64,000 nt of DNA, taken from the IMG/VR virus record IMGVR_UViG_3300042545_001134, positions 124,001 to 188,000 of that record; one strand, given 5' to 3'. Below, one piece after another: positions 6,001 to 58,392 of this stretch. Under the pieces are notes generated by a model that worked only from the letters and a program-made list of their open reading frames with translations, ran no database searches and had not been told where the DNA came from. Position numbers and translations under genes: made by a program. Position 1 is the first letter of the stretch; every line of letters begins with the position of its first letter.

Positions 6001-7969
6001 TTATATGACCAAAACCATCTAATAAGATGTCTTGGATATATGTTCTTCCTGAATTGTTTGATGAACCTGCAGCGCTTACTGAAGGGTGGGCGGTTAAATA
6101 AGTGTTCGAATCAACACTACCGTCTGCCTTTAAGAACTGCGTTGAAAGTCCACCTATTTTTTTTATTGTCGCGGCATTTAGTATACCACCATTTTCAAAG
6201 AAAATTCTTGGAACACCACCACCATCGATGAACTCTAATTGGTCAAAACTTGAATCCTTATTATATCTAATTAGGTACCCATTAAATGCACCCCCATCAC
6301 CGGCATACATTTCAATTGTTGTAAATCCGGTTGAGACGTTAATTTGACCTAATGTAAGTGTTGTATTATTCTTAAAGATACTAAGGTTACCAGTCATGGT
6401 ATCGCCACTCTTAGAAACTTTGTTTCCAATTGATGTTGCGACTGTTGTTGCGAAGTTAGGGTCATCCCCTAACGCCGCTGCCAATTCATTTAAGGTATCT
6501 AATGTTGATGGTGACGAATCAATTAGGTTAGTAATTTGTGTTTGTACGTAACCTGTAGTTGCATAACCATTAAGTGATGTTGATGTTAAATATGTGTTTG
6601 TGTCAACACCTAATGTACCATCTGAGTTAATAAACTTAACGAAACCATTTGTTGAATATGCATTGAATCTTGTTGTACCATTATTACTTAAACGGAAGTA
6701 TTCACTTCCACCAAATGTATACCATAATCCTTGGTTAGGTGTTGATGCGTTACTTCCACCAATATTGAAAACACTTTGTGTGCTTCCATCACCCGCCTTT
6801 AAAACTAAATTACTAAAGAATTGGTCGGCGGTACCTTGGTTATTTGAGTGGATATTAATTTGTCCACCACTCTTAATTGAGTAATTAACATTATTATCAG
6901 CAACAGGTCCAAATTGGATGTCACCGTTTGTTGTTAATCCACCAACTTCGATTGTATTTGTTGTTACCGAACCTCTGTCTGTTACATTATCAAATGTATC
7001 CGTTTCGGTGTATCCTGTTAGATATGAACCAGCGGGTTGGAATCTTCCATCAATGTCAACGGTGTATGTTCCACCATCGTTTTTTGTAAACGTGATGACA
7101 CCATCTCCGGTGTTAAACGTTGCACCAGTTGTAAATGTATTTGTATCTGTGTAACCTGTTAGGAAACCAAGAGAATATATCTGAGCGGAACCACTAATGA
7201 TATTAGAAGGTATTCCCGTCAATCCACTATAAGAAATTTGAGATGAACCCGATACTAATGTTGGTACATTAATAAGGTATGAATAACCTAATGAACCCGA
7301 TAAACCGTTGGTTACAATTAATGAACCTGTAATTTCAGAATTACTATTGATTGATACGATTGTACCCGTATCTGTAATATTTGAAGAGGTGATGTGGTCA
7401 CCACCTTGACCTTTTGTTACTCTATTATTTATGGTACCAACTTCATCACCAAGAGAACCTGTGTTTCTTGGACCTGAAATTAACATACCACCACTATACA
7501 TGGAGTCGACCGTGTTAGTGTAAACCCAATGATTTTTTTCACTATCCCATGTAAGAGATGCAGTCGCATTAGATGAACCCGAATCGTATACTTTAATACC
7601 TCCGAATCTCTCTAACGGTTCAAAAACGTTTACACTAATGTATGATTCACTAACTGCAAGTTGTGATGCGGTCAAGTAAAGTACCGATGATGAACCGTGT
7701 ACAATTAAATCATTAAGAATATAAACTGAACCACTTACAAATTGATTTCCTAAAAGATTTAGAGAACCCGTTAATGTATGTGAGCCGGAAATGTTAACAC
7801 TACCAGTAAAATTATGATTATCACTTAATTGGTCTCCGAACTTGGTGTTTCCATCAACAGTCAAAGAACCTGTAATAGTTTGTGAACCACTAACAACCAA
7901 GTTACCTTTTAATTCTGATGAACCCGATACGTGTAACGACCCCGTTACGTCTGCGTCAAATATTCTCAT
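1..7969 (-). CDS. Giant repetitive tail fibre / receptor-binding protein, partial (>=2656 aa, runs off the left edge)
   Basis: ATG at 7969 (MRIFDADVTGSLHVSGS). The same frame reads ...GNIAMGASPVSGVKLFV at position 1, and the ORF track reports no closed ORF in this frame, implying no internal stop. G/S/T/N-rich with fibre motifs LDTLNELAAALGDDxNFATT (x2) and GLDADTLDGxHASxFL (x3), and 8 copies of YVTGATFNTxTGVITxTRxDGxTVTVDxDG. Confidence 0.88.
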   Translation of the reverse strand, partial: MRIFDADVTGSLHVSGSSELKGNLVVSGSQTITGSLTVDGNTKFGDQLSDNHNFTGSVNISGSHTLTGSLNLLGNQFVSGSVYILNDLIVHGSSSVLYLTASQLAVSESYISVNVFEPLERFGGIKVYDSGSSNATASLTWDSEKNHWVYTNTVDSMYSGGMLISGPRNTGSLGDEVGTINNRVTKGQGGDHITSSNITDTGTIVSINSNSEITGSLIVTNGLSGSLGYSYLINVPTLVSGSSQISYSGLTGIPSNIISGSAQIYSLGFLTGYTDTNTFTTGATFNTGDGVITFTKNDGGTYTVDIDGRFQPAGSYLTGYTETDTFDNVTDRGSVTTNTIEVGGLTTNGDIQFGPVADNNVNYSIKSGGQINIHSNNQGTADQFFSNLVLKAGDGSTQSVFNIGGSNASTPNQGLWYTFGGSEYFRLSNNGTTRFNAYSTNGFVKFINSDGTLGVDTNTYLTSTSLNGYATTGYVQTQITNLIDSSPSTLDTLNELAAALGDDPNFATTVATSIGNKVSKSGDTMTGNLSIFKNNTTLTLGQINVSTGFTTIEMYAGDGGAFNGYLIRYNKDSSFDQLEFIDGGGVPRIFFENGGILNAATIKKIGGLSTQFLKADGSVDSNTYLTAHPSVSAAGSSNNSGRTYIQDILLDGFGHITGITTATETVTDTNDFISDVTFDGTNLTFTGSGGAFSSPVDISSVNTDTNYYVTGATFNTGNGIITLTRNDGGTVTVDIDGRFLTSYSETDTLATVTARGNTTNQAITVSGMTSYNDVVISGGTLTVYESVSGATVFAVDGTNGRLFAVTDDLSNSLFSVSTISGLPVIEAFADYHIVMGRFNQNDFYLGTTGEIGMGLLPVSGYKLAVSGNVRATSFVKSGGTSSQFLKADGSVDTNTYLTSYLNYYTTGVTFNTGDGVLTFTRTDGGTYTVDLDGRYGVSSTDYYTTGATFNTSNGVITYTRNDGGTYTVDIDGRFLTSYSEISTLEDVVQRGNTSTISITAASFITQGGNSGEFVKGDGSLDTNTYLTAHPSVSAASSSNNSGRTYIQDILLDSFGHITGITTASETVTDTNYYVTGATFNTGDGVITLTRNDGNTITVDIDGRFLTAHPSVSAASSSDNSGRTYIQDILLDSFGHITGITTGTETVVDTNTNYYVTGATFNTGNGIITLTRNDGNTVTVDIDGKYSELGHTHDDRYLPYVKNVETLGLPDGRWYTIAVNTGSRAVGKFILRDTSSGNHQSVVFYATHHYGNYSDITVLINSRYSGNPFRYIRIQDGSTYDGALLQVYIDQSSSTVQAWMLENIQSSGWVIKDWVDEAVDPGDVSNFPALTETPAQVDLDQTPQGGMIVTGPIYGGGDITQYEYLNTNNYSTTTDTRYYTETEIANFFGGSVAITGYNKSNWDTAYGWGNHASQGYATTGYVQTQITNLIDGAPSALDTLNELAAALGDDANFATTIASSIGAKLPLSGGTMTGNIAFGATSNLGLTWGVNTDAAFIKFISTSNAAGGSYLEIGTQDDSDEEIKFTQSGNVRFYLATDGFLRNGAGYKYVFENGTWGINISGNAATVTNGVYDNGTYSNPSWITALAGSKITGNITGNAYNITQYTINQDLGTSNSPTFSSVTATAYNTTYSPLRDKFRLWGTSSEYAIGMMNGMTYGGLNDYAMTFQFNSEDDRGFWWGDTAHSDAQGAMALTTNGYLTVARGVRVGYGESDTATPNVPLQVYGSGSLVFDVQGSQGQLFSITDSLSGSLFSVNDISGLPILEVFSDDKLVAGSFGTNAFVVSGTTTTVSGSFAVSGSATVNGGTVWHSGNDGASSGLDADTLDGLHASSFLTSYSETDTLASVTARGASTSTQSVFTGGLNARKNQTDNNYSTAALTTESYGNTTTGVAFHISGNVGKFLEMRTDGVLYWDNSKVWTAGTDGASSGLDADTLDGLHASSFLTAHPSVSAAGSSNNSGRTYIQDILLDGFGHITGITTASETVTDTNDFISDVTFDGTNLTFTGSGGAFSSPVDISSVNTDTNYYVTGATFNTSTGVITMTRNDGGTVTVDIDGKYAESSHTHSVIDDMTDEHRLFNNMGQNHSTYTDFNSVGDFGARYVNGSTNGPGTGSSQFYGFTLGLGNDYSFANYAMQLAIPRYNTSDRYVTFRTREATTWGSWYKIYAGYADTAGALSSMNISQFTNNSGYITGYSETDTLDSVLSRGASTTRTAEFYQTSNTFINTVAAANRGLTVYQDTAGADAYMTFHIGGDYAGYFGLGGAENDLVWGGWSVGNVRYRIWHSGNDGSGSGLDADTLDGQHASAFLTGHPSVSAAGSSDNSGRTYIQDILLDSFGHITGITTASETVVDTDTNYYVTGATFNTSTGVITMTRNDGGTVTVDIDGKYQEAGTYLGAISYNNNSNSNYQLLWGSGNAVYGTAEVYVNPSTDYVYAASFNASDWFRSSGNTGWYNSTHGGGIYQTESTMVRTYDNRGLWIDGGNSNTVQDATLYVTATNNNDWLAQFNAYNSSKSEYGIYVNIAAGATYGYALRTDSSSFTYRVDGSGRVYAPIYYDINDTAYYLNPASTSNLSTVKLNSTASGTEVFTVDGVNGRLFTITDDLSNSLFSVNTIAGVPVIEAFADNKVIMGRYNQNDFHLNTSGNIAMGASPVSGVKLFV
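1881..2090. repeat. Intragenic duplication, copy A (copy B at about 5832-6041)
   Basis: Near-identical run gttgctcccgttacgtaatagtt..gtatcggtgttaactgatgatatatcaaccggactactaaacgc...aaagtaacatcactaataaaatcatt at both loci; differences are mostly at synonymous positions. Confidence 0.9.
2141..2536. repeat. 66-bp direct repeat x2 (2141-2206 and 2471-2536)
   Basis: agttaagaatgaagatgcgtgaagaccatctaaggtatc(g/a)gcatctaatcctgaagatgccccatc with one mismatch; encodes DGASSGLDADTLDGLHASSFLT. Confidence 0.9.
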
Positions 7970-31355: not shown

Positions 31356-31362
31356 ATAAATA
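31356..31362 (-). promoter_or_regulatory. TATTTAT putative late-promoter element
   Basis: 18 nt upstream of ATG 31337. Confidence 0.5.
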
Positions 31363-32539: not shown

Positions 32540-33684
32540 TATATTCCGTATTTTCTTTTAATGTTATTATAGTTATTCAAAACTTCTGAGGATGATAATG
32601 CTCGGTTATAGAACGAAGTATTCGTAATTTTACCGTTAAAGTTTGCGGAAGATATGGGTCCATCGTTTCCAATATAAGCGGTGGCCTGTACAAAGTTGTA
32701 CCCTGTTGTGGCTGTGGCAACTGAATTTGCATTATAGTAGAGTGTAACGGCGGTTCCATCTCTGGTTATGACTACGTTAGTCCATTGCCCCACTGTGGGA
32801 AGTGTACTGTATTGAAGATGGTCTTCGACATTATATGCCCTTAAAACCATATTAGAACCAAGTTTACCTATCCAAAGTCCTCCAGTGACCGCAACAACTA
32901 ATAGACCAGCATAGTAAGAATATCCCACCGGATTTATCCAACAGGAGTATGTAAAATTTCCAGTTCCCGGAGCTAAATATGGATTATTACCAGCAGTAAT
33001 AAAATCATCCGTACCATCAAAAACCATTTGAGAGTTAGAATCGAATGAGACACTTGATAAATTAATTGTTGAATTGCCGGTCAAATCTAAAAGTCCTTGT
33101 GTTGTTGAACGGGTACCATTTACAAACGGTGTTGGATGTGATTTTACTTCTACTTGAAGATTTGAAAATCTCACTTTAACACTTCCCGATGAACCACCAC
33201 TACCGTTATTCATCCAAATTAAAATTCCAACCTTACCACCCGTACCAATAACTCCACTCCATGAAATTCTTTCTCGTGTTTTAGTATTTTTTGTGTTTCT
33301 ATCTTGTTCGGGTGAATACCCTAAATAAGTTTCTTCATTAACCGTTTGACCAATCCACATAAAACTAAACACACCATTGGTTTCATCGAACGACTCAACC
33401 ACCGCAGATATTGTAACGTATTGACCTGTATAATCGGATACATTATAATAAAAAGTTGTCCATGCCGCAACACCTCCCCACTCAACAGATGATGTTGTGA
33501 AATCAAAAGTTTTTGTTGCGCTATCAATTAAGGCATATGAACTCGGCCAACCACCATATAGTGGAGTGTTGTTTGCCAAATTTGTTGTTGGTTCACCCAA
33601 ATAGGAATTCTTTTGGTCAGATAAATCATAACCAAATACTAAATTCTCTTCTCCTGATATGTTGGGTCCTACGTGTGTTGGCAT
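32539..33684 (-). CDS. LamG/ConA-like lectin protein with CBM-like insert
   Basis: LVFGYD..NSYLGEPTTN, QVEVKSHPTPFVNGTRSTTQGLLDLT, FDGTDDFI, FNGKITNTSFYNRALS. Confidence 0.82.
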   Translation of the reverse strand: MPTHVGPNISGEENLVFGYDLSDQKNSYLGEPTTNLANNTPLYGGWPSSYALIDSATKTFDFTTSSVEWGGVAAWTTFYYNVSDYTGQYVTISAVVESFDETNGVFSFMWIGQTVNEETYLGYSPEQDRNTKNTKTRERISWSGVIGTGGKVGILIWMNNGSGGSSGSVKVRFSNLQVEVKSHPTPFVNGTRSTTQGLLDLTGNSTINLSSVSFDSNSQMVFDGTDDFITAGNNPYLAPGTGNFTYSCWINPVGYSYYAGLLVVAVTGGLWIGKLGSNMVLRAYNVEDHLQYSTLPTVGQWTNVVITRDGTAVTLYYNANSVATATTGYNFVQATAYIGNDGPISSANFNGKITNTSFYNRALSSSEVLNNYNNIKRKYGI

Positions 33685-34382
33685 TATAATCCGAATCTTG
33701 TTTTAGTTGCATTATAATTTTGAGTAATTTCTGCTTGAGTTATTACTCTATTATACATGAGAAAATTATATACATTTCCATCTAACGGATAGTTTCCACC
33801 AATTTGTAATCCTGATTGATTACCTAATGCCGCTCCACCTCCTCCTGTAGTAGTTAATAGGGTTGTGTTTTTGTAAAAATTTATATTTGAATTTGTTAAA
33901 CCATTTCCGTTATAGGTCATGGTAAAATAAAATATTTCGTTGTCAGTAAAGTTACTTGTAGTTTGAGTAAAGTTTGTTTGAGTTGCCGTGGAATTTTTTA
34001 TAAAATACCAATAACTTTGACCGTTACTATAGAATACATTTGTAACTATATAATGTAAACTATTGGATGAATTTAGATTGACTAAACACTTATCACCCAA
34101 TGTATCAAGTTTCATCCATGTACTAAATGACCACGCTCTTGATGACCAATCAATATCGCCAAATGGGGATGTTACTTGGGCATAATCATTACTCCCGTCA
34201 AAAACAATACTTCCTTTATTATTGGAGTTAAACGATGCACCATTAATCAATGTACCATTGTTTGCATTACCACTTAAATCATTCCACGAAGTACCCGACC
34301 CCGGATACGAATTGGTATCGGCGGAGTTCAAACATAAAACTAATCCATCTGTAATGATTTTTGCGGTGTATTCTAAACCCAT
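33684..34382 (-). CDS. LamG/ConA-like lectin protein (no insert)
   Basis: TDGLVLCLN..SYPGSGTSWNDLSG, FDGSNDY, MYNRVITQAEITQNYNATKTRFGL. Confidence 0.85.
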   Translation of the reverse strand: MGLEYTAKIITDGLVLCLNSADTNSYPGSGTSWNDLSGNANNGTLINGASFNSNNKGSIVFDGSNDYAQVTSPFGDIDWSSRAWSFSTWMKLDTLGDKCLVNLNSSNSLHYIVTNVFYSNGQSYWYFIKNSTATQTNFTQTTSNFTDNEIFYFTMTYNGNGLTNSNINFYKNTTLLTTTGGGGAALGNQSGLQIGGNYPLDGNVYNFLMYNRVITQAEITQNYNATKTRFGL

Positions 34383-34386
34383 ACCA

Positions 34387-34393
34387 ATAAATA
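34387..34393 (-). promoter_or_regulatory. TATTTAT putative late-promoter element
   Basis: Only 4 nt upstream of ATG 34382. Confidence 0.4.
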
Positions 34394-38634: not shown

Positions 38635-38641
38635 ATAAATA
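38635..38641 (-). promoter_or_regulatory. TATTTAT putative late-promoter element
   Basis: Immediately downstream of a terminator, 64 nt upstream of ATG 38570. Confidence 0.5.
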
Positions 38642-38707: not shown

Positions 38708-40687
38708 TTAGTAAGTTCCACCATCAATGACGGTCGAGAATATTAATCCACCATTTGAGTTTTTATAACCCAAAATACCATCCATAACGTCAGTTGTTTC
38801 TGTTGTTGAAACATAACCAACTACGTTGGTATTATTTCTAAACATAATTGCCGATGTTTTGGTTAAACCATCCGCACCGCCCGCAGAACTCAAAGTAACG
38901 TTACCAGCGATTAAGGTTGCCCCATCACTCGCAGTTACGGTGAATTTATTTGTGTTGTACGCTAAAGTTGTTCCATTATCAGTAAGTAAACTGTTTCCAA
39001 TACTACTTGCTCCGGTTGCTTTAGGGATTGTATTTGTTGTTAAACTTATTTCAGAACCATATGTTCCTGGAGTTGTACCAATTAATTTACTTGATTCACC
39101 ACTTGAAGAAACGAACATCCAATAGTCACTCAATGAATCCCAAACCAATGATGCAGAAACACCAACAGAACCTGAGTCAATAACTTCAAATCCAGCATAT
39201 CTTTCAAATGGAGAATATGCGTTCAATCTGATAATATTGTCATCCAATTCAATAACTGATGAAGAGATATGTACTTGAGTTGCACTACCTAATAAATTTA
39301 AATTACCACTAATATTAACATCACCACTGAAACCTGTGTTTCCTGTGATTGTCATTGTACCACCTGTAATGTTAGTTGATACTAAGTTAGTATGGTTAGC
39401 GGTTGTTGAATTTAATGTTGAACCCGTTCCTAAATCTACCGTTTGTGGTAAACTAACCGTCCAAGTTCTATCACCTGTTAAGTTTTGAGCCCCACCAACT
39501 ACAGTTACTTGGTTTGTTGTTCCTGTCACAGTTAAGTTTCTGTCACCCCTAACCGCATGTGATGTGGTGGTTGCTTGAGAACTTAATGTAAATTGATTAA
39601 AGGTAGGAGTTGCTCCTGTTCTAATGTCTTGGTCTAAATCATACTTTAATGTGTTTGTACTATTGTTGAATGTGGTGGTTAAACCTTTAGATGCAACACC
39701 TTCAAATGTTATACTTTCAGTTTTCAATGAAACCTCACCGATATTGGTGGTCGTACCATCGGAAGATGTAACAAATAATGTTGAAACAATTCCTGTTAAG
39801 TTAGAACCATCACCGATAAATGAACCTGTGAATGTAGATGCGGTAACTGCTCCTGTTAATATTGCTGAACCCTGTACATTCAATGAACCTGTAACGATAA
39901 CTTTATCAGTTACTTCATTACCCAAATAAGAACTACCACTAACAAGTAAATCCTGAGATATTGTCACTCCAGTGGCATTTAATGTACTAACGTATGCGGT
40001 ACCACTAAGGTATAGGTTTCTCCAATATTTTGAAGTAGAACCAAGGTCAAACGCGTTATTAATGTCGGGAACAATTGAAGAGGAGATATCAGCACCAAAT
40101 GATACAAAATCTGTATCACCGTCACCAACCGTGATATTACCACCTAAAGTGATATTACCATCAATAACTGCGTTTCCTGTTAATTTTAAGTTTGAACCAG
40201 TAATGTTTCCTGTAAAGATACTATCACCACCAACAGTTAAACTGTTTGTTACTTTTACGTGAGAACCTGTTAATGCAGATGTGAAGTTACCAATACTACC
40301 AGTTACTGAATTAACGTTTGCATTACTACCTGTTAAACTAGTAACGGTAACGTTGGAAATCGTATTTCCCTCCATGTTACCTGTTAAGTCTACCTTTCTG
40401 TTACCACCCGACGCTAAAACATATAATGCCTCATCTGTGGTTGAATAAAATGGAGTACCATCTAAAACAGTACCGTATGAACCGGCAGCAATTGTGGGTA
40501 CTGTTGACCCTTCATAAATTTTAGAAGTGGGTTTATATCCACCAGCGATTTCATCATCACCAACGAACACCCAAGGTCCATTCATTGTACCGATAGAACC
40601 GGTTGCTACAACAAATTCACCTTTTCTGGCTGTTACATCTTTCAGTTGTGTGATGGAACCCCTTCTGTGTTTGATTATTTGTGCCAT
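38708..40687 (-). CDS. Tail-fibre-like structural protein (659 aa)
   Basis: MAQIIKHRRG..ARKGEFVVATG (Mtd_N-like); G/S/T-rich beta repeats; C-terminal IDGGTY. Confidence 0.7.
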   Translation of the reverse strand: MAQIIKHRRGSITQLKDVTARKGEFVVATGSIGTMNGPWVFVGDDEIAGGYKPTSKIYEGSTVPTIAAGSYGTVLDGTPFYSTTDEALYVLASGGNRKVDLTGNMEGNTISNVTVTSLTGSNANVNSVTGSIGNFTSALTGSHVKVTNSLTVGGDSIFTGNITGSNLKLTGNAVIDGNITLGGNITVGDGDTDFVSFGADISSSIVPDINNAFDLGSTSKYWRNLYLSGTAYVSTLNATGVTISQDLLVSGSSYLGNEVTDKVIVTGSLNVQGSAILTGAVTASTFTGSFIGDGSNLTGIVSTLFVTSSDGTTTNIGEVSLKTESITFEGVASKGLTTTFNNSTNTLKYDLDQDIRTGATPTFNQFTLSSQATTTSHAVRGDRNLTVTGTTNQVTVVGGAQNLTGDRTWTVSLPQTVDLGTGSTLNSTTANHTNLVSTNITGGTMTITGNTGFSGDVNISGNLNLLGSATQVHISSSVIELDDNIIRLNAYSPFERYAGFEVIDSGSVGVSASLVWDSLSDYWMFVSSSGESSKLIGTTPGTYGSEISLTTNTIPKATGASSIGNSLLTDNGTTLAYNTNKFTVTASDGATLIAGNVTLSSAGGADGLTKTSAIMFRNNTNVVGYVSTTETTDVMDGILGYKNSNGGLIFSTVIDGGTY

Positions 40688-40715
40688 AATTTTTGTATAA
40701 TTTTTTTTCTTTTAT

Positions 40716-40722
40716 ATAAATA
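40716..40722 (-). promoter_or_regulatory. TATTTAT putative late-promoter element
   Basis: 28 nt upstream of ATG 40687. Confidence 0.5.
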
Positions 40723-40735
40723 GTTAATTTTTCCT

Positions 40736-41449
40736 TTAAATAAAACCTCCCAAGTCAATTTCAGCATTTGCGGTTGGATTGGAAAACACACCCAAACCTT
40801 GGAGACTTAAAGAGGCGGATACTACTTGTGTGTTAATCATGTTTTGAACAATAGACATCGTTCCTGAAACCACAAGAGATTCGGTATTTGGGTCATTTTT
40901 CTGAATAAGGGTTGTTTTACCCTCAACGATTAAATCTCCCTTAATTATGGTCGCACCACTAATAGTAATGATGGAACCGTCGTCAGATACTCGTGAATCT
41001 ACAAGAGTACCGTTCGCATGAACTTTTTGTAACACATTTGTGTTACCCAAACCACCAATAAGAATTGGTTGTTCAGAACCTGAAGGACCCGCTATCCATC
41101 TGTCATTTGCGGAATCCCATAATAAACTTCCCGACACCAAATTTGGTGATGTTGGGTCTCTAACGATAAAACCACCAAATGCATCTGCAGTCCCGTTTAG
41201 TTCGATAATATTATCGCCAAGGGATATTGTGGTTGAATCAATAGTGGTAGTTGTACCAAGTACAGTTAAGTTACCACCAACAACAACACTACCAGATGTT
41301 TGGAGGGTATTGATTGTGAGTGCTCCACTAACGTTTAAATCATTAGCGAATATTCCCTCTAATGGGGAACCGATACTACCTAAAACTACCGTAGTACCTG
41401 AAGGTGGAACCGTCTCAATTTGTGTCCAATTAATCTTTTGTAATGCCAT
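40736..41449 (-). CDS. Tail-fibre-like structural protein (237 aa)
   Basis: Shares the GNLTVLGTTTTIDS..DNIIELN..G..LLWDS module with gene 38708-40687 and the giant fibre N-terminus. Confidence 0.65.
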   Translation of the reverse strand: MALQKINWTQIETVPPSGTTVVLGSIGSPLEGIFANDLNVSGALTINTLQTSGSVVVGGNLTVLGTTTTIDSTTISLGDNIIELNGTADAFGGFIVRDPTSPNLVSGSLLWDSANDRWIAGPSGSEQPILIGGLGNTNVLQKVHANGTLVDSRVSDDGSIITISGATIIKGDLIVEGKTTLIQKNDPNTESLVVSGTMSIVQNMINTQVVSASLSLQGLGVFSNPTANAEIDLGGFI

Positions 41450-41476
41450 GTAAAAGTAAAGTCTTTTACATAAATA
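41448..41476 (-). promoter_or_regulatory. TATTTAT element overlapping a 9-bp hairpin that sequesters the start codon
   Basis: Minus strand reads TATTTATGTAAAAG-ACTTTA-CTTTTACATG; stem ATGTAAAAG/CTTTTACAT includes the AT of the ATG. Confidence 0.55.
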
Positions 41477-41498
41477 TTTTATATTAAGTTATAGGCAC

Positions 41499-41527
41499 AA
41501 AAAAAGAGGATTAATTATCCTCTTTTT
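41499..41527 (-). terminator. Rho-independent terminator overlapping the glutaredoxin stop
   Basis: AAAAGAGGAT-AATTA-ATCCTCTTTT followed by TTT. Confidence 0.7.
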
Positions 41528-41804
41528 CTAAAGTAATGTACTTTTTTATAATTTCTAACGCTTCTTCCTCGTTATTGAAGTCCCTTGTGGGACAAAAAAC
41601 AGGTCCATTTTCGGTTCCTTCCTGTTTTATAAAAAATGTTGGTAGGTAATCCAATTTGGTTTGAGCAACCACTTGGTCCCATAATTTTTGATTAGAATCA
41701 ACATCAATTTCGGTAAACGGAATGGAAAGTTCTTTTAGTTTACCCTTTAGGGTTTTACAGTGTCCACATCCTTTTAGGGTGAACAATAACAATTTATTAC
41801 TCAT
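41511..41804 (-). CDS. Glutaredoxin/NrdH-like protein
   Basis: LFTLKGCGHCKTLK, IPFTEIDVD, LPTFFI. Confidence 0.85.
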   Translation of the reverse strand: MSNKLLLFTLKGCGHCKTLKGKLKELSIPFTEIDVDSNQKLWDQVVAQTKLDYLPTFFIKQEGTENGPVFCPTRDFNNEEEALEIIKKYITLEKEDN

Positions 41805-42114
41805 TTATACTCAATTGTGACAATACATCTCGATAATGAGTGTCGGCTTGTATACCTGTGGTTGTGTTAACTTTTAAATTTCCATCAAAAAATATAACAG
41901 TCGGTACTGAGCGAATACCCAAATCTAACATGTATGATTGGTTATCATCAACATTTACCTTAACAAATTTAACGTCAGGGTACTCTGATTCTAATCTTTC
42001 TAATCTTGGGATTAACGTTTTACAGGGTCCACACCAGTCGGCGTAGAAATCCGCTAATACTTTTTCTCCACGGAACTTCATTTGTTCCAATTCTTCACTT
42101 GATACTTGTTGCAT
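41797..42114 (-). CDS. trxA: Thioredoxin
   Basis: ADFYADWCGPCK, KFVKVNVD, IRSVPTVIFF. Confidence 0.92.
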   Translation of the reverse strand: MQQVSSEELEQMKFRGEKVLADFYADWCGPCKTLIPRLERLESEYPDVKFVKVNVDDNQSYMLDLGIRSVPTVIFFDGNLKVNTTTGIQADTHYRDVLSQLSINE

Positions 42115-42119
42115 ATTTT

Positions 42120-43193
42120 TTAATTAAATCCTATTTGTGTTTTATTATCGTGTTTAAAGACTTCTTCGTCTATATTGTAAATATCAGCCAAAGTCATTCC
42201 TTTGTCAACCCTTTTTTCATTTCCAAGGTGTTCTAAAAGACGATTTGACTCTTCAGTTGTTAGTTTTTCAAATTTGTGTTCGGCAATCAATCTTCCTTTA
42301 CGAAGTAACGCTTGGTCAATCTTCTCTCTTTTCATATTAAATGTTGCCACAACCTGAATGTTCAAACAATCACCCAGAATACCGTCTGTAAGGTTCAGGA
42401 TGTTCGAAACTCCAACAGATGACCCATTACCCTCTCTATCGGCAATAACTCTCTCAGCGTCCTCTACAATCAAAATAGAGTTCTTATGTTCCATTAGGAA
42501 TGGAATGATTGATGGTTCGGATAATGATTCCGCCATTGATGGTGGAATGAATAAAATTTCCTTATCTGTAATCAAACGAGTAAGATATTTGATATATGAA
42601 GTTTTACCTGTCCCCGGGTCACCGTGAAATAGGATAATACCTTTATCATTCGGGTTGTTTAATCTTTTGATGATAACATCATGTACTTTAACAAACTCAG
42701 AACCGTAATTTAATTCCAAATTAATATCAGGTACATTCATCTCATACTCTTCAGTATCTAAATGTCCCATTTCTGATTTGACCAAGTTGATGCCCGATTT
42801 TTTAATTGAGATTTCAAATTGACTTAAATCCAAATATACAGTTTGCTCTTCGAATGAACCATTCTGAGTATTATAAAGTACTGATATCTCATAATAAATC
42901 CCATGAGTCTTATCATAATTACCTTTTAATAGGATACCAAGATGACCATCCGCATTAAAGAATAAATGATTATTCGATGGTTTATCGTATCTTCTACCGG
43001 TGTGTCTTGTCTCCACTTCTAAATAAAATTTATTTGAAATTAAGTGGTTATATAAATTATGTCCGTATTTTTTTGTTGAATCTGAAAATTTAGACGGTAC
43101 TGCGTCGAAGTAATGAACAAATAATTGTTCTAACGGCATTTCATATCCATATGAAATTTCGTGTAGTGGGTATTTTTCTGGTAATCTATTCAT
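42120..43193 (-). CDS. AAA+ ATPase (BCS1-like)
   Basis: Walker A GDPGTGKT, Walker B ILIVEDAE, SRH DQALLRKGRL. Confidence 0.88.
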   Translation of the reverse strand: MNRLPEKYPLHEISYGYEMPLEQLFVHYFDAVPSKFSDSTKKYGHNLYNHLISNKFYLEVETRHTGRRYDKPSNNHLFFNADGHLGILLKGNYDKTHGIYYEISVLYNTQNGSFEEQTVYLDLSQFEISIKKSGINLVKSEMGHLDTEEYEMNVPDINLELNYGSEFVKVHDVIIKRLNNPNDKGIILFHGDPGTGKTSYIKYLTRLITDKEILFIPPSMAESLSEPSIIPFLMEHKNSILIVEDAERVIADREGNGSSVGVSNILNLTDGILGDCLNIQVVATFNMKREKIDQALLRKGRLIAEHKFEKLTTEESNRLLEHLGNEKRVDKGMTLADIYNIDEEVFKHDNKTQIGFN

Positions 43194-43194
43194 C

Positions 43195-43488
43195 TTATTT
43201 TAAATAAAAATTTATCTGGTTTGGGATGTATTCGTATATTGAGTCATCCGGTATTTCCTCTTCTGATTTTTTAAATGCAACTAATGTTATTCTAACTAAT
43301 TCAAATTGTTCTTTACTTAATTCCGGTTGTCCTCTCTTTTCAAAATTGATTTGTGAAATGTCACTTACCAAATCAAAAAAATCAGATTCACTATCATTGG
43401 CAATAAAATACCTTTTTGCGTCTTCATTACCATCGATATATTTTTTTACAGTCTGCAGATAAATTAATACCTCAGGTGATTTCTCCAT
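43195..43488 (-). CDS. Hypothetical protein (97 aa)
   Basis: ORF track; operon spacing. Confidence 0.65.
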   Translation of the reverse strand: MEKSPEVLIYLQTVKKYIDGNEDAKRYFIANDSESDFFDLVSDISQINFEKRGQPELSKEQFELVRITLVAFKKSEEEIPDDSIYEYIPNQINFYLK

Positions 43489-43491
43489 AAA

Positions 43492-44379
43492 TTAATAATT
43501 CATTATCAGTAATTCGATGCCATCGTTTTGTGTTCCATCTTTCTTAGAACCCGCGGCCTTTTTGAACGTTCGTCTTTCCCATCTAAATTGTTTACTGAAC
43601 ATTGATAGTTGACCATTCTCACCTACATTGGTTCCGTATATTGGAAACCAATCATGTAGTTGTGGGAATTCGTAATATGATAAACTAAATTTACCTTGTG
43701 CACCCTTCAATGCGTTTGCCAATCTTTCGTGGTCTTTTGAATCGAAGTCGTGGTTTGAGTAATAGTTCTCAGTTTTCCAATACGGTGGGTCCATATAGAA
43801 ATATGTTGTGGGTGAATCGTATTTTTCAATTACTGTTTGAAAATCCATATTCTCAACGAATGTGATTCTCCCTAAATGTGCTCGGTATTCAAGATGTTTT
43901 AATTTATCCATGAATATCAAGACTTTACATCTGTACTTACCCTTATAATCAGTGTAATTTGATGACTCGGGTTTTGACCCCGAGAATACTTGGGTTAACA
44001 CATAGACGTACTTCGCAGCAACATCATAGTTAGGTTCGTCTCCAATTACTAAATCAGGACTAAACACCTCTTTTTGATAGGTTTTGAACATCTGTTCATA
44101 TTCAGGTGGGGTTACCTCAACACCAACCTGTTGACATGGGTATTTTGCCAACTCTTCCCACATCCTATCGCAGTCTCTTGAACATTTAAATAGATTGGCG
44201 TTCAATCCATTAAAGTCATTGTAGACTACAGTTTTCAAGTTAGGGTAGTTCTTTAAATCCATGTTAAAGAAAACCCAAAACATCCCTGAAAACCCTTCAA
44301 CATATGTTTCAATATCCGTTGGTATGTACGGAACTATCCATTTACCTATTCTTGCTTTTCCACCAATGTATGATATCAT
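43492..44379 (-). CDS. dam: N6-adenine DNA methyltransferase (D12/Dam class)
   Basis: MISYIGGK, YVEGFSG, VYNDFN, YMDPPY, FSLSY. Recognition sequence cannot be read from the sequence. Confidence 0.85.
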   Translation of the reverse strand: MISYIGGKARIGKWIVPYIPTDIETYVEGFSGMFWVFFNMDLKNYPNLKTVVYNDFNGLNANLFKCSRDCDRMWEELAKYPCQQVGVEVTPPEYEQMFKTYQKEVFSPDLVIGDEPNYDVAAKYVYVLTQVFSGSKPESSNYTDYKGKYRCKVLIFMDKLKHLEYRAHLGRITFVENMDFQTVIEKYDSPTTYFYMDPPYWKTENYYSNHDFDSKDHERLANALKGAQGKFSLSYYEFPQLHDWFPIYGTNVGENGQLSMFSKQFRWERRTFKKAAGSKKDGTQNDGIELLIMNY

Positions 44380-44415
44380 CTCCTAAAGTTGTAATTTAGT
44401 GTTTTATTTGTACGT

Positions 44416-44440
44416 ATTAGAAAATATAAGTAAAAAAAAC
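44416..44440 (-). promoter_or_regulatory. Putative early/middle promoter (T-tract + CTTATATT)
   Basis: TTTTTTTTACTTATATTTTC; shares the 14-mer TTTTTACTTATATT with 61694-61708 and resembles a degenerate Bacteroidota -7 element. Confidence 0.45.
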
Positions 44441-44498
44441 CGTAAAAAAAAGAGGTGGGTCAAAGTTTTTTGAGTGTCCTTATTTCTTGACAAACTCC

Positions 44499-44505
44499 TA
44501 TTTAT
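44499..44505 (+). promoter_or_regulatory. TATTTAT element (plus strand)
   Basis: 17 nt upstream of plus-strand ATG 44523. Confidence 0.45.
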
Positions 44506-44522
44506 TATGTATACTTTAAATT

Positions 44523-44675
44523 ATGGCATGTTCAGAATGTAAGAAAAAACAATCTCTCAAGGAGGAATTGGTTAAGAGCACCGAGTTTGTTCAGAAGGGG
44601 GTGATGTGGTTTGTTGTTATTTGGAGTGGGTTCGCCATTTACGGTATCTACACACTCATCTGTAAGTTTATATGA
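44523..44675 (+). CDS. Small membrane protein with N-terminal CxxC (50 aa, below ORF-track cutoff)
   Basis: MACSECKKKQSLKEELVKSTEFVQKGVMWFVVIWSGFAIYGIYTLICKFI*; ATGA overlap with the next gene. Confidence 0.7.
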   Translation: MACSECKKKQSLKEELVKSTEFVQKGVMWFVVIWSGFAIYGIYTLICKFI

Positions 44676-45310
44676 AAAACGGAAAGTACTTTATAGTTCT
44701 TTTCTGTAATAAGAAGAGAATAAAAATTTTGTATCGTTGTCAGAAACTGACGACAATACATGAGTACTGGCGCGAATTTAAAACTGAAAGACAACCACGT
44801 TTCTTAAAGACACAAGGTGGTAAAAGAAAACAAGAACAATTATTTGAATTGGCATTAATCTTCCCAAATAGTCGTTGGGTTAAGAGTACATATGTTAAAG
44901 ATAGTCTTGGTAGATTAATTGAGACAAAGATGGAAGACGATAAACTTCGCATCAAAGAAATTATTCCATATTGGAAAGAAGAATTAATTTATGATTTTCA
45001 AACAAAGAAAAGAATCCGATATCATGAGATGTTATCATCAATAATGGAGATATCGGAGATTGGTCAGATATTCACATTAAATAACAAACTATTTGTACAG
45101 GTTGAGGATGATATAAGATTGTACGGTAATAAAAATATTGCGGATGCTGAGAGATTGTTTGGTTTGGTTAGAGAGGACCTATTAAAAAAGAAAAAGGGTA
45201 ATTTCATCTTCGTTAAAGATGTAACTACCGCTCAAAGAAAATTACTTTATACTTTATTGGAATCAAAAGGATTTAAGAGGACTGAACTTTTTCGTCATTA
45301 CTCTTATTAA
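44672..45310 (+). CDS. Hypothetical basic protein (212 aa)
   Basis: ORF track; coupled to 44523-44675. Confidence 0.75.
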   Translation: MKNGKYFIVLFCNKKRIKILYRCQKLTTIHEYWREFKTERQPRFLKTQGGKRKQEQLFELALIFPNSRWVKSTYVKDSLGRLIETKMEDDKLRIKEIIPYWKEELIYDFQTKKRIRYHEMLSSIMEISEIGQIFTLNNKLFVQVEDDIRLYGNKNIADAERLFGLVREDLLKKKKGNFIFVKDVTTAQRKLLYTLLESKGFKRTELFRHYSY

Positions 45311-46437: not shown

Positions 46438-46474
46438 ATTTTTCCGTTTTTATTACTAATATACGGAAAAAATT

Positions 46475-52349: not shown

Positions 52350-53159
52350 TTATAAATAGTTTAGTAATCCATAACTATCGTTTCTAAGTTTTTTAAGTGC
52401 CTTGTCACGTAGTTGTCTAATACGTTCTTTGGTACATCCAAACTCTTCACCGAGGTCTTCCAAATTCATTTCTACACCAGCAAGACCGTAGGATTTTTCA
52501 ATTATGACCTTTTCTCTGTCATCTAAGATAGATAACATCATATCCACTCTTCTACGAACTTCTTCGGGAGTGTTTAATAGTGCCTCAGGGTCATCGGCAT
52601 CTTTATTTGGGATTACATCAATAAGTTGGTCCCCATCTTCATTTATTTCATCATTAAGGTTTACACAATGTGGTAAAATAAAATCTCTTCCCTTATCTTC
52701 ATAGTTAATGAAAAATTGGTCGTCTTTGTATGGTTGGTTTTTTTGTCTTTTCTGATTTTCTTGAATGATATTCGAAGGTAATCGAATGATTCTTGCATTC
52801 TCATTAAGAGATGCCATGATTGATTGTTTCACCCACCAAACGGCGTATGATATAAATTTGAAACCACTAGTTGGGTCGAATCTTTCCGACGCTTTCATTA
52901 GACCGATATTACCTTCAGATATTAAATCCATAATATCCATTCCTTGACCTTGATATAATTTGGCAACGGTAATAACAAAACGAAGATTTCCTACAACTAA
53001 TTCATTGAGATAATTTTCTCTTTCTTTTTTTGGTAGGTCTTTTCTTTTTAGTTCAGTAAAAATTATTTCTTGTCTCTCGTGAGAAATAACTTTAATCTTT
53101 CTAAGGTCTTTTATGTATTGTTGTATTTCCTCCGTGTTGATTAATATTGATTTACTCAT
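52350..53159 (-). CDS. rpoD: RNA polymerase sigma-70 factor, RpoD/SigA family
   Basis: Region 2 NLRFVITVAKLY..DLISEGNIGLMKASERFDP..FKFISYAVWWVKQSI; region 4 MNLEDLGEEFGCTKERIRQL..KAL.KLR; no region 1.1. Confidence 0.93.
   Translation of the reverse strand: MSKSILINTEEIQQYIKDLRKIKVISHERQEIIFTELKRKDLPKKERENYLNELVVGNLRFVITVAKLYQGQGMDIMDLISEGNIGLMKASERFDPTSGFKFISYAVWWVKQSIMASLNENARIIRLPSNIIQENQKRQKNQPYKDDQFFINYEDKGRDFILPHCVNLNDEINEDGDQLIDVIPNKDADDPEALLNTPEEVRRRVDMMLSILDDREKVIIEKSYGLAGVEMNLEDLGEEFGCTKERIRQLRDKALKKLRNDSYGLLNYL
52352..52358 (-). promoter_or_regulatory. TATTTAT putative late-promoter element
   Basis: Within the last codons of the sigma gene, 13 nt upstream of ATG 52338. Confidence 0.45.
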
Positions 53160-53181
53160 AAATTTGTTGTTTGGTTCACTA

Positions 53182-53212
53182 CAAATGTACGAATATTTTT
53201 TTAATTTTCAAA
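53182..53212 (-). promoter_or_regulatory. Bacteroidota sigmaA-type promoter (-33 TTTG / -7 TAnnTTTG)
   Basis: Minus strand TTTG (53212-53209), 19-nt spacer, TACATTTG (53189-53182), 22 nt upstream of the sigma ATG. Confidence 0.75.
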
Positions 53213-58346: not shown

Positions 58347-58392
58347 AAGTTTTTTTATTAAAATAATACGAAAAAAATTTGACTAAACCAAA

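What the first reader, a model, noticed from the sequence alone, without database searches (positions are those of the whole stretch)
41448..41527. AUG-sequestering hairpin overlapping the late-promoter motif at the early/late boundary
At the junction between the redox/DNA genes and the fibre block, the minus strand reads terminator ... TATTTATGTAAAAG-ACTTTA-CTTTTACATG. A read-through transcript would fold a 9-bp stem that hides the start codon. A transcript starting just downstream of TATTTAT would lack most of the 5' arm. This mirrors the established T4 mechanism (genes e, soc, I-TevI) that blocks premature translation of late genes.
Basis: partly seen in the sequence, partly recalled or inferred. 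Interest (0 to 1): 0.6.

Follow-up and report, generated by a model that had tools for sequence, protein, structure and literature searches.

The report
Late-promoter hairpin hiding a start codon
In an uncultivated 311-kb freshwater phage, a small conserved RNA hairpin pairs the late promoter of a tail-fibre-like gene with that gene's start codon. Only RNA started at the late promoter should therefore be translatable, which is an independent copy of a timing trick known from phage T4.

Summary
On the minus strand a perfect 9-bp stem (41471-41463 with 41456-41448, loop 41462-41457) buries the A and U of the start codon at 41449-41447 of a 237-aa fibre-like gene. Two U·G pairs can extend it to 11 bp. 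Its 5' arm overlaps TATTTAT (41476-41470).

TATTTAT is the most enriched upstream 7-mer in this 310,691-bp phage. It precedes the portal, terminase, tail-sheath and fibre genes. The spacing TATTTAT-N4/5-ATG at the portal gene is kept in 44 distinct relatives' upstream contexts. This places the late start site at about 41465/41464, inside the 5' arm.

Statistics within this one genome are weak, and close relatives show no compensatory changes. A leader-blind sample of 50 distinct leaders settles the matter. 32 of the 50 fold at -5 kcal/mol or better, against 1.9% of random leaders. They use different stem sequences in two registers, and show a C-G, U·G, U-A series that fits sense-strand RNA.

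Such RNA must start upstream and cross a conserved terminator. The start site, read-through and the effect on translation remain untested. I file it as a new member of a known kind, of moderate interest.

The parts
41797..44379 (-). Upstream, tightly packed block of non-structural genes: Dam-type methylase 43492-44379, small ORF 43195-43488, AAA ATPase 42120-43193 and thioredoxin 41797-42114. Presumed early or middle operon.
   Evidence: ORFs; Pfam hits. No TATTTAT on this strand between 41477 and 47000. The timing class is inferred from gene function and from the absence of the motif.
41511..41804 (-). Glutaredoxin-like gene (97 aa), the last gene before the boundary.
   Evidence: PF00462, E = 1e-9; phrog_22 thioredoxin domain. 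Relatives' upstream flanks align to it, so the synteny looks conserved.
41499..41528 (-). Intrinsic-terminator-like hairpin (12 bp, 5-nt loop) followed by a U-run. It overlaps the glutaredoxin stop codon.
   Evidence: Fold. 100 of 102 distinct relatives' contexts have a hairpin plus T-run here, with about 50 different stem strings. The simple consensus scanner did not call it, probably because the A/U extension of the stem uses up the T-run.
41470..41476 (-). TATTTAT, the -10-like core of the phage's late promoter class. This copy is the only one of 69 with G as its eighth base (41469).
   Evidence: enrichment and orientation; late genes carry it; conserved at the portal gene in relatives.
41464..41465 (-). 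Inferred late transcription start: the fifth or sixth base after TATTTAT. The RNA would keep only AAG or AG of the 5' arm.
   Evidence: Nine genes in this genome have TATTTAT-N4-ATG. Relatives' portal genes keep N4 or N5 (N6 in one context; the three with trimmed match starts were not measured) across 44 distinct contexts. AAG at motif positions 12-14 is invariant in the type-B register, where positions 13-14 are unpaired, and nearly so (18-20 of 20) in type A. This is an inference, not a mapped start.
41463..41473 (-). 5' arm of the hairpin: ATGTAAAAG at 41471-41463, plus two U at 41473-41472 that can pair with G41446 and G41447. It overlaps the last four bases of the promoter motif.
41457..41462 (-). 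Hairpin loop, ACTTTA.
   Evidence: It is the most variable segment among type-A relatives: 15% non-reference cells, against 4% in the 5' arm.
41446..41456 (-). 3' arm of the hairpin: CTTTTACAT at 41456-41448, plus G41447 and G41446 as U·G partners. It contains the start codon at 41449-41447.
40736..41449 (-). The regulated gene: a 237-aa fibre-like virion protein, first gene of the fibre block.
   Evidence: Translation. Weak PHROG hits to virion structural proteins. Similar to the neighbouring 659-aa fibre protein and to the N-terminal part of the 4057-aa giant protein. No Pfam or PDB match.
52350..53159 (-). Phage sigma-70-family factor with regions 2 and 4. It is a candidate for the factor that reads TATTTAT promoters; this role is an inference.
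   Evidence: phrog_351, E = 2.7e-49. No RNA polymerase beta-type domain was found in the genome. A host-type TTTG...TAnnTTTG match lies just upstream at about 53212.

Best explanation
This is a transcript-length-dependent translational gate.

- RNA that starts upstream, in the methylase-ATPase-thioredoxin-glutaredoxin block, and escapes the terminator at 41528-41499 carries both arms of the hairpin.
- In that RNA the 3' end of the promoter sequence and the bases after it pair with the region over the start codon. The AUG at 41449-41447 then sits in an 11-bp helix.
- This phage shows no Shine-Dalgarno signal, so access to the AUG region should be the main requirement for initiation. The gene should therefore stay silent on such RNA.
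- When host RNA polymerase carrying a phage sigma factor initiates at the TATTTAT promoter, RNA starts at about 41465/41464, inside the 5' arm. The hairpin cannot form. The 16-nt A/U-rich leader is open, with an opening cost of about 0.9 against 7.9 kcal/mol, and the fibre-like protein is made.

**Shown here:** the structure, its conservation and covariation, the promoter class, and the spacing rule.

**Inferred:** the start site, read-through of the terminator, the identity of the sigma factor, and the effect on translation.
For: **Structure and energetics.**

**Outlier status.** Most structured of 42 comparable late leaders in this genome, and in the top 0.025% of random leaders.

**Conservation in a leader-blind sample.** The sample was anchored on the protein's N-terminal codons only.
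- It gave 102 distinct contexts and 50 distinct leaders.
- 32 of 50 fold at -5 kcal/mol or better, against 1.9% of random leaders. 28 of those have the AUG paired.

**Different sequences rebuild the same helix.** Examples are TTATCTGAA/TTCAGATAA, TTATTTGTA/TACAAATAA and TATAATA/TATTATA.

**Covariation in the type-B alignment.**
- Pair 8-23 is CG 7, UA 3, UG 2, GC 1, GU 1, with no broken cell.
- The covariation score is 0.147 against 0.065 in shuffles, reached in 0 of 500 shuffles.
- RNAalifold finds the same helix.

**RNA, sense strand.** U·G intermediates occur, and the sense strand folds better than the antisense in 37 of 50 leaders. This argues for sense RNA rather than a DNA palindrome.

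**Loop varies most.** In type A the loop is the most variable segment while the arms hold.

**Promoter class.**

**Spacing rule.** TATTTAT-N4/5-ATG.

**Boundary.** This is the first TATTTAT after more than 5.5 kb without one.

**No Shine-Dalgarno signal.** SD-like 4-mers occur upstream of 5.7% of genes, against 10.5% at random positions.

**Precedent.** T4 genes e, soc, 49 and I-TevI, in PMC3014915 section 29.
Against: - Among close relatives there is not one compensatory change. All 22 departures break a pair, and the 5' arm is nearly invariant.
- 18 of 50 distinct leaders fold more weakly than -5 kcal/mol. A few leave the AUG free, such as the L088, L138 and L144 types.
- A strong terminator, conserved by covariation in 100 of 102 contexts, lies 22 nt upstream. 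Read-through may be rare.
- No metatranscriptome contig bridges the terminator. One RNA-library contig (run X16) ends at 41474, nine bases upstream of the inferred start. Molecules carrying the whole 5' arm therefore exist in that library. Read-through RNA, DNA carry-over and an upstream start cannot be told apart.
- No other late gene in this genome has such a hairpin. Why this gene needs one is unexplained.
Confidence: 0.6

Rival explanations
1. The hairpin belongs to the late mRNA itself, because transcription starts at or upstream of TATTTAT. It would then act as a 5'-terminal stabiliser or a constant brake that keeps output of this fibre-like protein low.
For: A contig from RNA library X16 ends at 41474, two to three bases before the helix. 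The gene would be needed in fewer copies than the major virion proteins. The structure is gene-specific.
Against: - The portal and terminase genes have TATTTAT only 4 nt before their ATG, and the terminase copy sits directly after a terminator. That leaves no room for another promoter.
- This spacing is kept in 44 distinct relatives' contexts. TATTTAT therefore behaves as the core promoter, with the start 5-6 nt downstream.
- The X16 contig has about 4.6-fold depth, in a library that covers early and late genes evenly, and may be DNA.
Confidence: 0.12
2. The hairpin serves the upstream transcripts. It would act as a back-up 3' structure that stalls or protects RNA that escaped the first terminator. 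Its overlap with the AUG would be a by-product of the very short (20-nt) leader.
For: It lies 22 nt behind a terminator at a strikingly constant distance: 19-23 nt in 98 of the 100 contexts that have a terminator. Any hairpin in a 20-nt leader must touch both the promoter and the AUG.
Against: - No U-run follows the hairpin.
- In both registers the pairing specifically uses the start codon: A6-U7 with AU of the AUG in type A, and UAU of the motif with AUG in type B.
- No similar second hairpin follows the other terminators of this genome that are followed directly by a late promoter.
Confidence: 0.1
3. It is a DNA-level element: a palindromic operator for a dimeric regulator, or a cruciform, that controls firing of this one late promoter.
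For: It is a perfect inverted repeat overlapping the promoter and the start site. The 5' half is almost invariant among close relatives, as a protein-binding site would be.
Against: - The arms differ completely between lineages while complementarity is kept.
- Changes run through U·G intermediates, which are mismatches in DNA. The outermost pairs are U·G in every sequence.
- The sense strand folds better than the antisense in 37 of 50 leaders.
- The motif occurs nowhere else in the genome.
Confidence: 0.07
4. It has no function. The stem would be a chance product of an A/T-rich leader, carried along with a conserved promoter and N-terminal coding block.
For: Single-genome statistics are weak. 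Close relatives show only uncompensated changes. Several lineages have lost most of the stem.
Against: - 32 of 50 distinct leaders fold at -5 kcal/mol or better, against 1.9% of random leaders.
- Stems of unrelated sequence occur at the same place, with significant covariation.
- The loop varies more than the arms.
Confidence: 0.05

Closest known systems
Phage T4 inhibitory hairpins at the translation starts of genes e (lysozyme), soc, 49 and I-TevI (review PMC3014915, section 29)
   Same: Longer transcripts started upstream fold a helix that hides the start codon. A late promoter lies in the DNA that encodes the 5' strand of that helix, so late transcripts lack that strand and are translated. 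Related phages keep comparable structures.
   Different: - It is not homologous.
- The promoter core is TATTTAT(A/T), not TATAAATA. In the upstream, same-strand position TATTTATA occurs 41 times and TATAAATA 6 times.
- The start-site spacing is shorter, 5-6 nt after the 7-mer.
- There is no Shine-Dalgarno sequence to hide.
- The promoter element itself is the strand that pairs with the AUG.
- A strong terminator stands directly upstream.
- The regulated gene is a fibre-like structural gene.
Hairpins that sequester the ribosome-binding sites of free-standing homing endonuclease genes (Aeh1 mobE, T4 segB), as cited in PMC3014915
   Same: A local RNA hairpin limits translation of a gene that is embedded in, or follows, earlier transcription units.
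   Different: Those regulate selfish endonuclease genes in T4-like phages of Proteobacteria. Here the gene is a virion gene in a phage with Bacteroidota-like expression signals.
Bacteroidota promoter architecture (-33 TTTG, -7 TAnnTTTG) and Shine-Dalgarno-independent initiation. This is from my own knowledge of the literature and was not re-read here.
   Same: TATTTATN resembles the -7 box, and the inferred start 4 nt after the 8-mer fits that geometry. The phage's presumed early block carries many TTTG-N17-23-TAnnTTTG matches, and genes lack SD motifs.
   Different: The late motif has A where the -7 box has T, usually ends in A or T rather than G, and has no fixed -33 partner. It is probably read by a phage sigma factor.

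Membership tests
T4-type gate: inhibitory start-site hairpin with an internal late promoter | The start codon (and the SD, where there is one) is paired in a stable helix in the longer transcript. | tested here: met
   An 11-bp helix including A and U of the AUG, about -8.9 kcal/mol. Opening cost is 7.9 kcal/mol in long RNA.
T4-type gate: inhibitory start-site hairpin with an internal late promoter | A late promoter lies in the DNA encoding the 5' strand, so late RNA starts inside the structure. | tested here: met
   TATTTAT at 41476-41470 overlaps the 5' arm at 41473-41463. The motif's promoter status rests. The start at 41465/41464 is inferred from the N4/5 spacing and is not mapped.
T4-type gate: inhibitory start-site hairpin with an internal late promoter | Transcripts from upstream early or middle promoters extend into the gene. 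| tested here: inconclusive
   Covariation of sense-strand RNA that includes the promoter implies such RNA exists. However, a terminator intervenes, and no metatranscriptome contig bridges it.
T4-type gate: inhibitory start-site hairpin with an internal late promoter | Translation is repressed on the long RNA and active on the short RNA. | not testable with these tools
   Only predicted opening energies are available: 7.9 against 0.9 kcal/mol.
T4-type gate: inhibitory start-site hairpin with an internal late promoter | The structure is kept in related phages. | tested here: met
   32 of 50 distinct leaders fold at -5 kcal/mol or better, with compensatory changes. About a third are weakened.
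T4 late promoter (TATAAATA, read by gp55 with gp33 and gp45) | TATAAATA on the non-template strand, centred near -10. | tested here: not met
   The enriched, oriented motif is TATTTAT(A/T). In the upstream, same-strand position TATAAATA occurs 6 times and TATTTATA 41 times. Homologues of gp55, gp33 and gp45 were not searched for.
Intrinsic (factor-independent) terminator, for the element at 41528-41499 | A G+C-containing stem-loop directly followed by a U-run, at the end of a gene. | tested here: met
   Fold. 100 of 102 relatives' contexts have a hairpin plus T-run, with about 50 different stems. The simple scanner missed it.
Any Rfam family | A match at the family's gathering score. | tested here: not met
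   Best hits have E = 0.4-0.5 and 20-26 bits, against gathering scores of 60-90.

The most novel reading that the evidence does not exclude
The roughly 30-nt module is a self-contained timing device in which the -10-like promoter element doubles as the strand that pairs with the start codon. TATTTAT pairs with AUAAAUG in one register, and UUAUGU with ACAUGG in the other.

Its maintenance by covariation would mean that the conserved terminator just upstream is routinely read through or anti-terminated early in infection. In a host without Shine-Dalgarno selection, any exposed AUG on such RNA would be used. Promoter-to-AUG pairing would then be a general, still unrecognised way for phages of such hosts to insulate late genes.
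Probability: 0.3. Interest if true: 0.6.

Novelty: new member of a known kind. Interest (0 to 1): 0.5.

Why it matters
- It shows that the T4 strategy has arisen independently. In that strategy, long early RNA is kept untranslatable because the late promoter sits inside an inhibitory hairpin. Here it appears in a large, uncultivated freshwater myovirus group with different promoters and no Shine-Dalgarno signals.
- It provides a working late-promoter motif, TATTTAT(A/T), and a start-site rule for that group. The rule implies leaderless portal and terminase mRNAs. Both can be used to annotate timing classes in hundreds of related metagenomic contigs.
- Conserved sense-strand RNA structure across a promoter is indirect evidence that the upstream terminator is leaky or overridden.

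Tried and rejected
- **Phage collection searches.** Megablast and tblastn of the locus against the annotated phage collection found nothing.
- **Genome-wide hairpin count.** The count of perfect hairpins of at least 9 bp is too weak to prove anything. There are 30, against about 15 expected, and 2 lie at start codons.
- **Close-relative alignment A1.** It gave zero covariation. Taken alone it would have argued against a structure. It was superseded by the leader-blind samples.
- **First DNA pattern.** The pattern fixed the loop and the flanks and so was biased towards type A. It was used only as a lead.
- **Consensus terminator scan.** It called no terminator in 40600-44700. I judge this a limit of the scanner, given.
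- **Rfam.** No family matched.
- **Metatranscriptome contigs of four RNA runs.** Depth was low, pieces were short, none bridged 41475-41570, and one ended at 41474. Contigs cannot show RNA ends, so this is inconclusive.
- **ATG-TAA mini-ORF in the 5' arm.** Rejected as a feature, because types B, C and G lack it.
- **RNase III site.** Rejected from general knowledge, because the helix is too short at 11-12 bp.
- **Phage-encoded multisubunit RNA polymerase.** No beta-type domain was found.
- **Identity of the 237-aa protein.** PDB and Pfam gave no match. Structure prediction and the large protein searches were not spent on it.

Full report
**Setting.**
- The window is bases 124001-188000 of a 310,691-bp IMG/VR virus record, about 35% G+C and estimated 93% complete.
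- The phage encodes a tail sheath, a portal and a large terminase, so it is a jumbo myovirus.
- It encodes a sigma-70-family factor with regions 2 and 4 at 52350-53159, a weak second sigma-like ORF, and no RNA polymerase beta-type domain.
- Shine-Dalgarno-like 4-mers are depleted upstream of genes: 5.7% against 10.5% at random positions.
- A plus-strand block at genome 41.8-54.8 kb carries many TTTG-N17-23-TAnnTTTG matches.
- Both features fit a Bacteroidota-type host. That is an inference resting on my knowledge of that promoter type.
- The DNA occurs in many lake-water metagenomes.

**The observation.**
- Read on the minus strand, the locus runs as follows. The glutaredoxin-like gene 41804-41511 ends in a 12-bp hairpin plus U-run (41528-41499). 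Then come 22 nt of spacer, TATTTAT (41476-41470), and a perfect 9-bp inverted repeat with a 6-nt loop. The 3' arm of that repeat contains the A and U of the start codon (41449-41447) of a 237-aa ORF.
- RNAfold extends the stem by two U·G pairs.
- The ORF's product resembles the neighbouring fibre protein and the N-terminal part of a 4057-aa giant protein. It has weak PHROG hits to virion proteins.

**Is it chance?**
- Within one genome the case is weak. Perfect hairpins of at least 9 bp are only about twice as common as in Markov simulations, and half a hairpin would be expected to overlap a start codon by chance.
- The start-region opening energy in a long RNA is 7.9 kcal/mol, which ranks 22nd of 369 genes.
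- Compared with its own class the site stands out. Of 42 TATTTAT promoters with 12-35 nt leaders, its motif-to-start segment folds at -8.9 kcal/mol. The next best is -3.9 and the mean is -1.1 (sd 1.6). Only 0.025% of random leaders of matching composition reach -8.9, and 1.9% reach -5.

**The promoter.**
- TATTTAT is the most enriched 7-mer in upstream regions: 62 regions against 3.1 expected.
- 87 of its 146 copies lie in the 7% of the genome that is intergenic.
- 64 intergenic copies lie within 60 nt upstream of a same-strand start, against 15 for the reverse complement.
- It precedes the portal, terminase, tail-sheath and fibre genes.
- On the minus strand there is no copy between 41477 and 47000. 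The first copy is the one at 41476, and each fibre gene downstream has its own. The site is therefore a boundary between a block without the motif (methylase, ATPase, thioredoxin, glutaredoxin) and a late block.

**The start site.**
- Nine genes in this genome have TATTTAT-N4-ATG. The terminase copy sits directly after a terminator.
- In 44 distinct upstream contexts of relatives' portal genes (78-100% protein identity), the spacing is N4 or N5 in nearly all. One has N6, and three have match starts offset into the gene.
- The start codon must be on the RNA, so late transcription starts no later than the fifth or sixth base after the motif. The sharp spacing suggests leaderless mRNAs.
- Applied here, the start is A41465 or A41464. 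The late RNA then keeps two or three bases of the 5' arm, and its AUG region costs about 0.9 kcal/mol to open.
- AAG at motif positions 12-14 is invariant in the type-B register, where positions 13-14 lie in the loop. In type A it is nearly invariant (18-20 of 20). This fits a constraint from initiation.

**Relatives, first look.**
- Thirty loci that share the protein's N-terminus and the same gene order were aligned.
- The block from the promoter to the start codon is almost invariant, while the terminator stems and the spacer differ.
- The helix shows no compensatory change, and all 22 departures break pairs. The 5' arm never varies but the 3' arm does.
- On this evidence alone the stem could be a passenger of a sequence-constrained block.

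**Relatives, leader-blind sample.**
- Searching only for the codons of the N-terminus (M-A-L/F-Q-x-I-N-W) in viral and metagenome contigs gave 102 distinct contexts carrying the motif and 50 distinct leaders.
- 32 of the 50 fold at -5 kcal/mol or better, and 28 of those have the AUG paired.
- The stems are not all the same sequence.
  - Type A is the window's form.
  - Type B pairs the whole TATTTAT with AUAAAUG and adds an inner stem CUGAA/UUCAG or variants.
  - Other lineages use UUGUA/UACAA, UAUAAUA/UAUUAUA, a shifted UUAUGUAAA/UUUACAUAA, or an A-U pair in place of G-C.
- In the gap-free type-B alignment:
  - Pair 8-23 is C-G in 7 sequences, U-A in 3, U·G in 2, G-C in 1 and G·U in 1, with none broken.
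  - Pair 9-22 alternates between U-A and U·G.
  - The covariation score is 0.147 against 0.065±0.018 in shuffles (reached in 0 of 500). It also exceeds all slid controls.
  - RNAalifold recovers the same helix.
- In type A the loop is the most variable segment at 15% non-reference cells. The 3' arm has 11% and the 5' arm 4%.
- The sense strand folds better than the antisense in 37 of 50 leaders.
- The C-G, U·G, U-A series and the constant outer U·G pairs make sense for RNA read in the gene's direction. They do not fit duplex DNA or a protein operator.

**Consequence.**
- A selected sense-strand RNA helix that includes the promoter element can exist only on RNA started upstream of that promoter.
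- The promoter's own RNA starts inside the 5' arm.
- It also implies that the terminator, conserved in 100 of 102 contexts with about 50 different stems, is not fully efficient. This was not tested.

**What stays open.**
- No start site, read-through RNA or translational effect has been observed.
- Logan contigs from four metatranscriptomes cover parts of both gene blocks at low depth. None bridges 41475-41570. One from run X16 spans 41203-41474 and so ends inside TATTTAT, nine bases upstream of the inferred start. It could be read-through RNA, carried-over DNA, or evidence for an upstream start.
- About a third of the distinct leaders have weakened stems, so the gate is dispensable in some lineages.
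- It is not clear why this gene, alone among the late genes of this genome, is gated.

**Comparison and verdict.**
- The architecture works like the T4 gate. It meets three of that gate's five defining features here; read-through was inconclusive and the translational effect could not be tested.
- It is not a member by descent. The promoter is TATTTAT(A/T), not TATAAATA, the spacing is shorter, and there is no Shine-Dalgarno element. The promoter core itself is the strand that pairs with the AUG.
- No Rfam family matches.
- I rate it a new member of a known kind, with confidence 0.6 in the mechanism and about 0.9 that the hairpin is a selected RNA structure. Interest is 0.5.

Noticed in passing
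whole genome G000; in the window e.g. 40716-40722, 38635-38641, 34387-34393, 31356-31362 (minus strand): TATTTAT(A/T) is a phage-specific promoter-type motif, 20-fold enriched upstream of genes. Its eighth base is A in 44 copies, T in 20, C in 4 and G in 1. The bases after it are A-rich. I found no description of it in the paper library.
   Followed up: partly
genome 281695-283506 (portal) and 283564-285333 (terminase), loci L280 and L281; in the window 33684-34382: Nine genes have their ATG exactly 4 nt after TATTTAT. The portal spacing is kept in relatives. This implies leaderless, or one-base-leader, late mRNAs for the portal and terminase genes.
   Followed up: partly
genome about 41.8-54.8 kb, plus strand (outside the window): A block of short plus-strand genes is preceded each time by a near-identical element of about 45 nt containing TTTG...TAnnTTTG, the Bacteroidota-type -33/-7 pattern. 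There are 17 matches in 13 kb. This is probably the early region.
   Followed up: no
window 58347-58392, 53160-53200, 46438-46474 (minus strand), and elsewhere in the genome: A second recurring upstream motif, T(T/C)CGTA(T/C)(A/T), lies 4-48 nt before the starts of 11 genes, including the sigma-factor gene. It may mark a further promoter class.
   Followed up: no
window 52350-53159 (minus strand); genome 266252-266950 (plus strand, L129:1366-2064): A phage sigma-70-family factor with regions 2 and 4 (phrog_351), plus a second, weak sigma-region-2-like ORF of 232 aa with no PHROG match. No RNA polymerase beta-type domain was found in the genome.
   Followed up: partly
window 2-7969 (minus strand), running on to genome 119796: A giant ORF of 4057 aa has its own TATTTAT promoter and a leader ending in ACTTTACATG. 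Its N-terminal part resembles the 237-aa fibre-like protein.
   Followed up: no
window 41477-41498, and the same place in relatives: The distance from the end of the terminator's T-run to TATTTAT is almost fixed: 22 nt in 63 contexts and 19-23 nt in 98 of the 100 contexts that have a terminator. ATGC usually follows the T-run directly. In the window itself the T-run reads on as TTTG, 21 nt before TATTTATG. That resembles a host-type promoter with one mismatch.
   Followed up: no
window 41203-41474: A 280-nt contig from metatranscriptome run X16 ends at 41474, inside the promoter motif. No RNA-library contig crosses the terminator-promoter gap.
   Followed up: partly
genome 1-1,000 and about 303-308 kb (outside the window): Upstream regions at both ends of the record look like tRNA genes, suggesting a large tRNA cluster. 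No tRNA scan was run.
   Followed up: no
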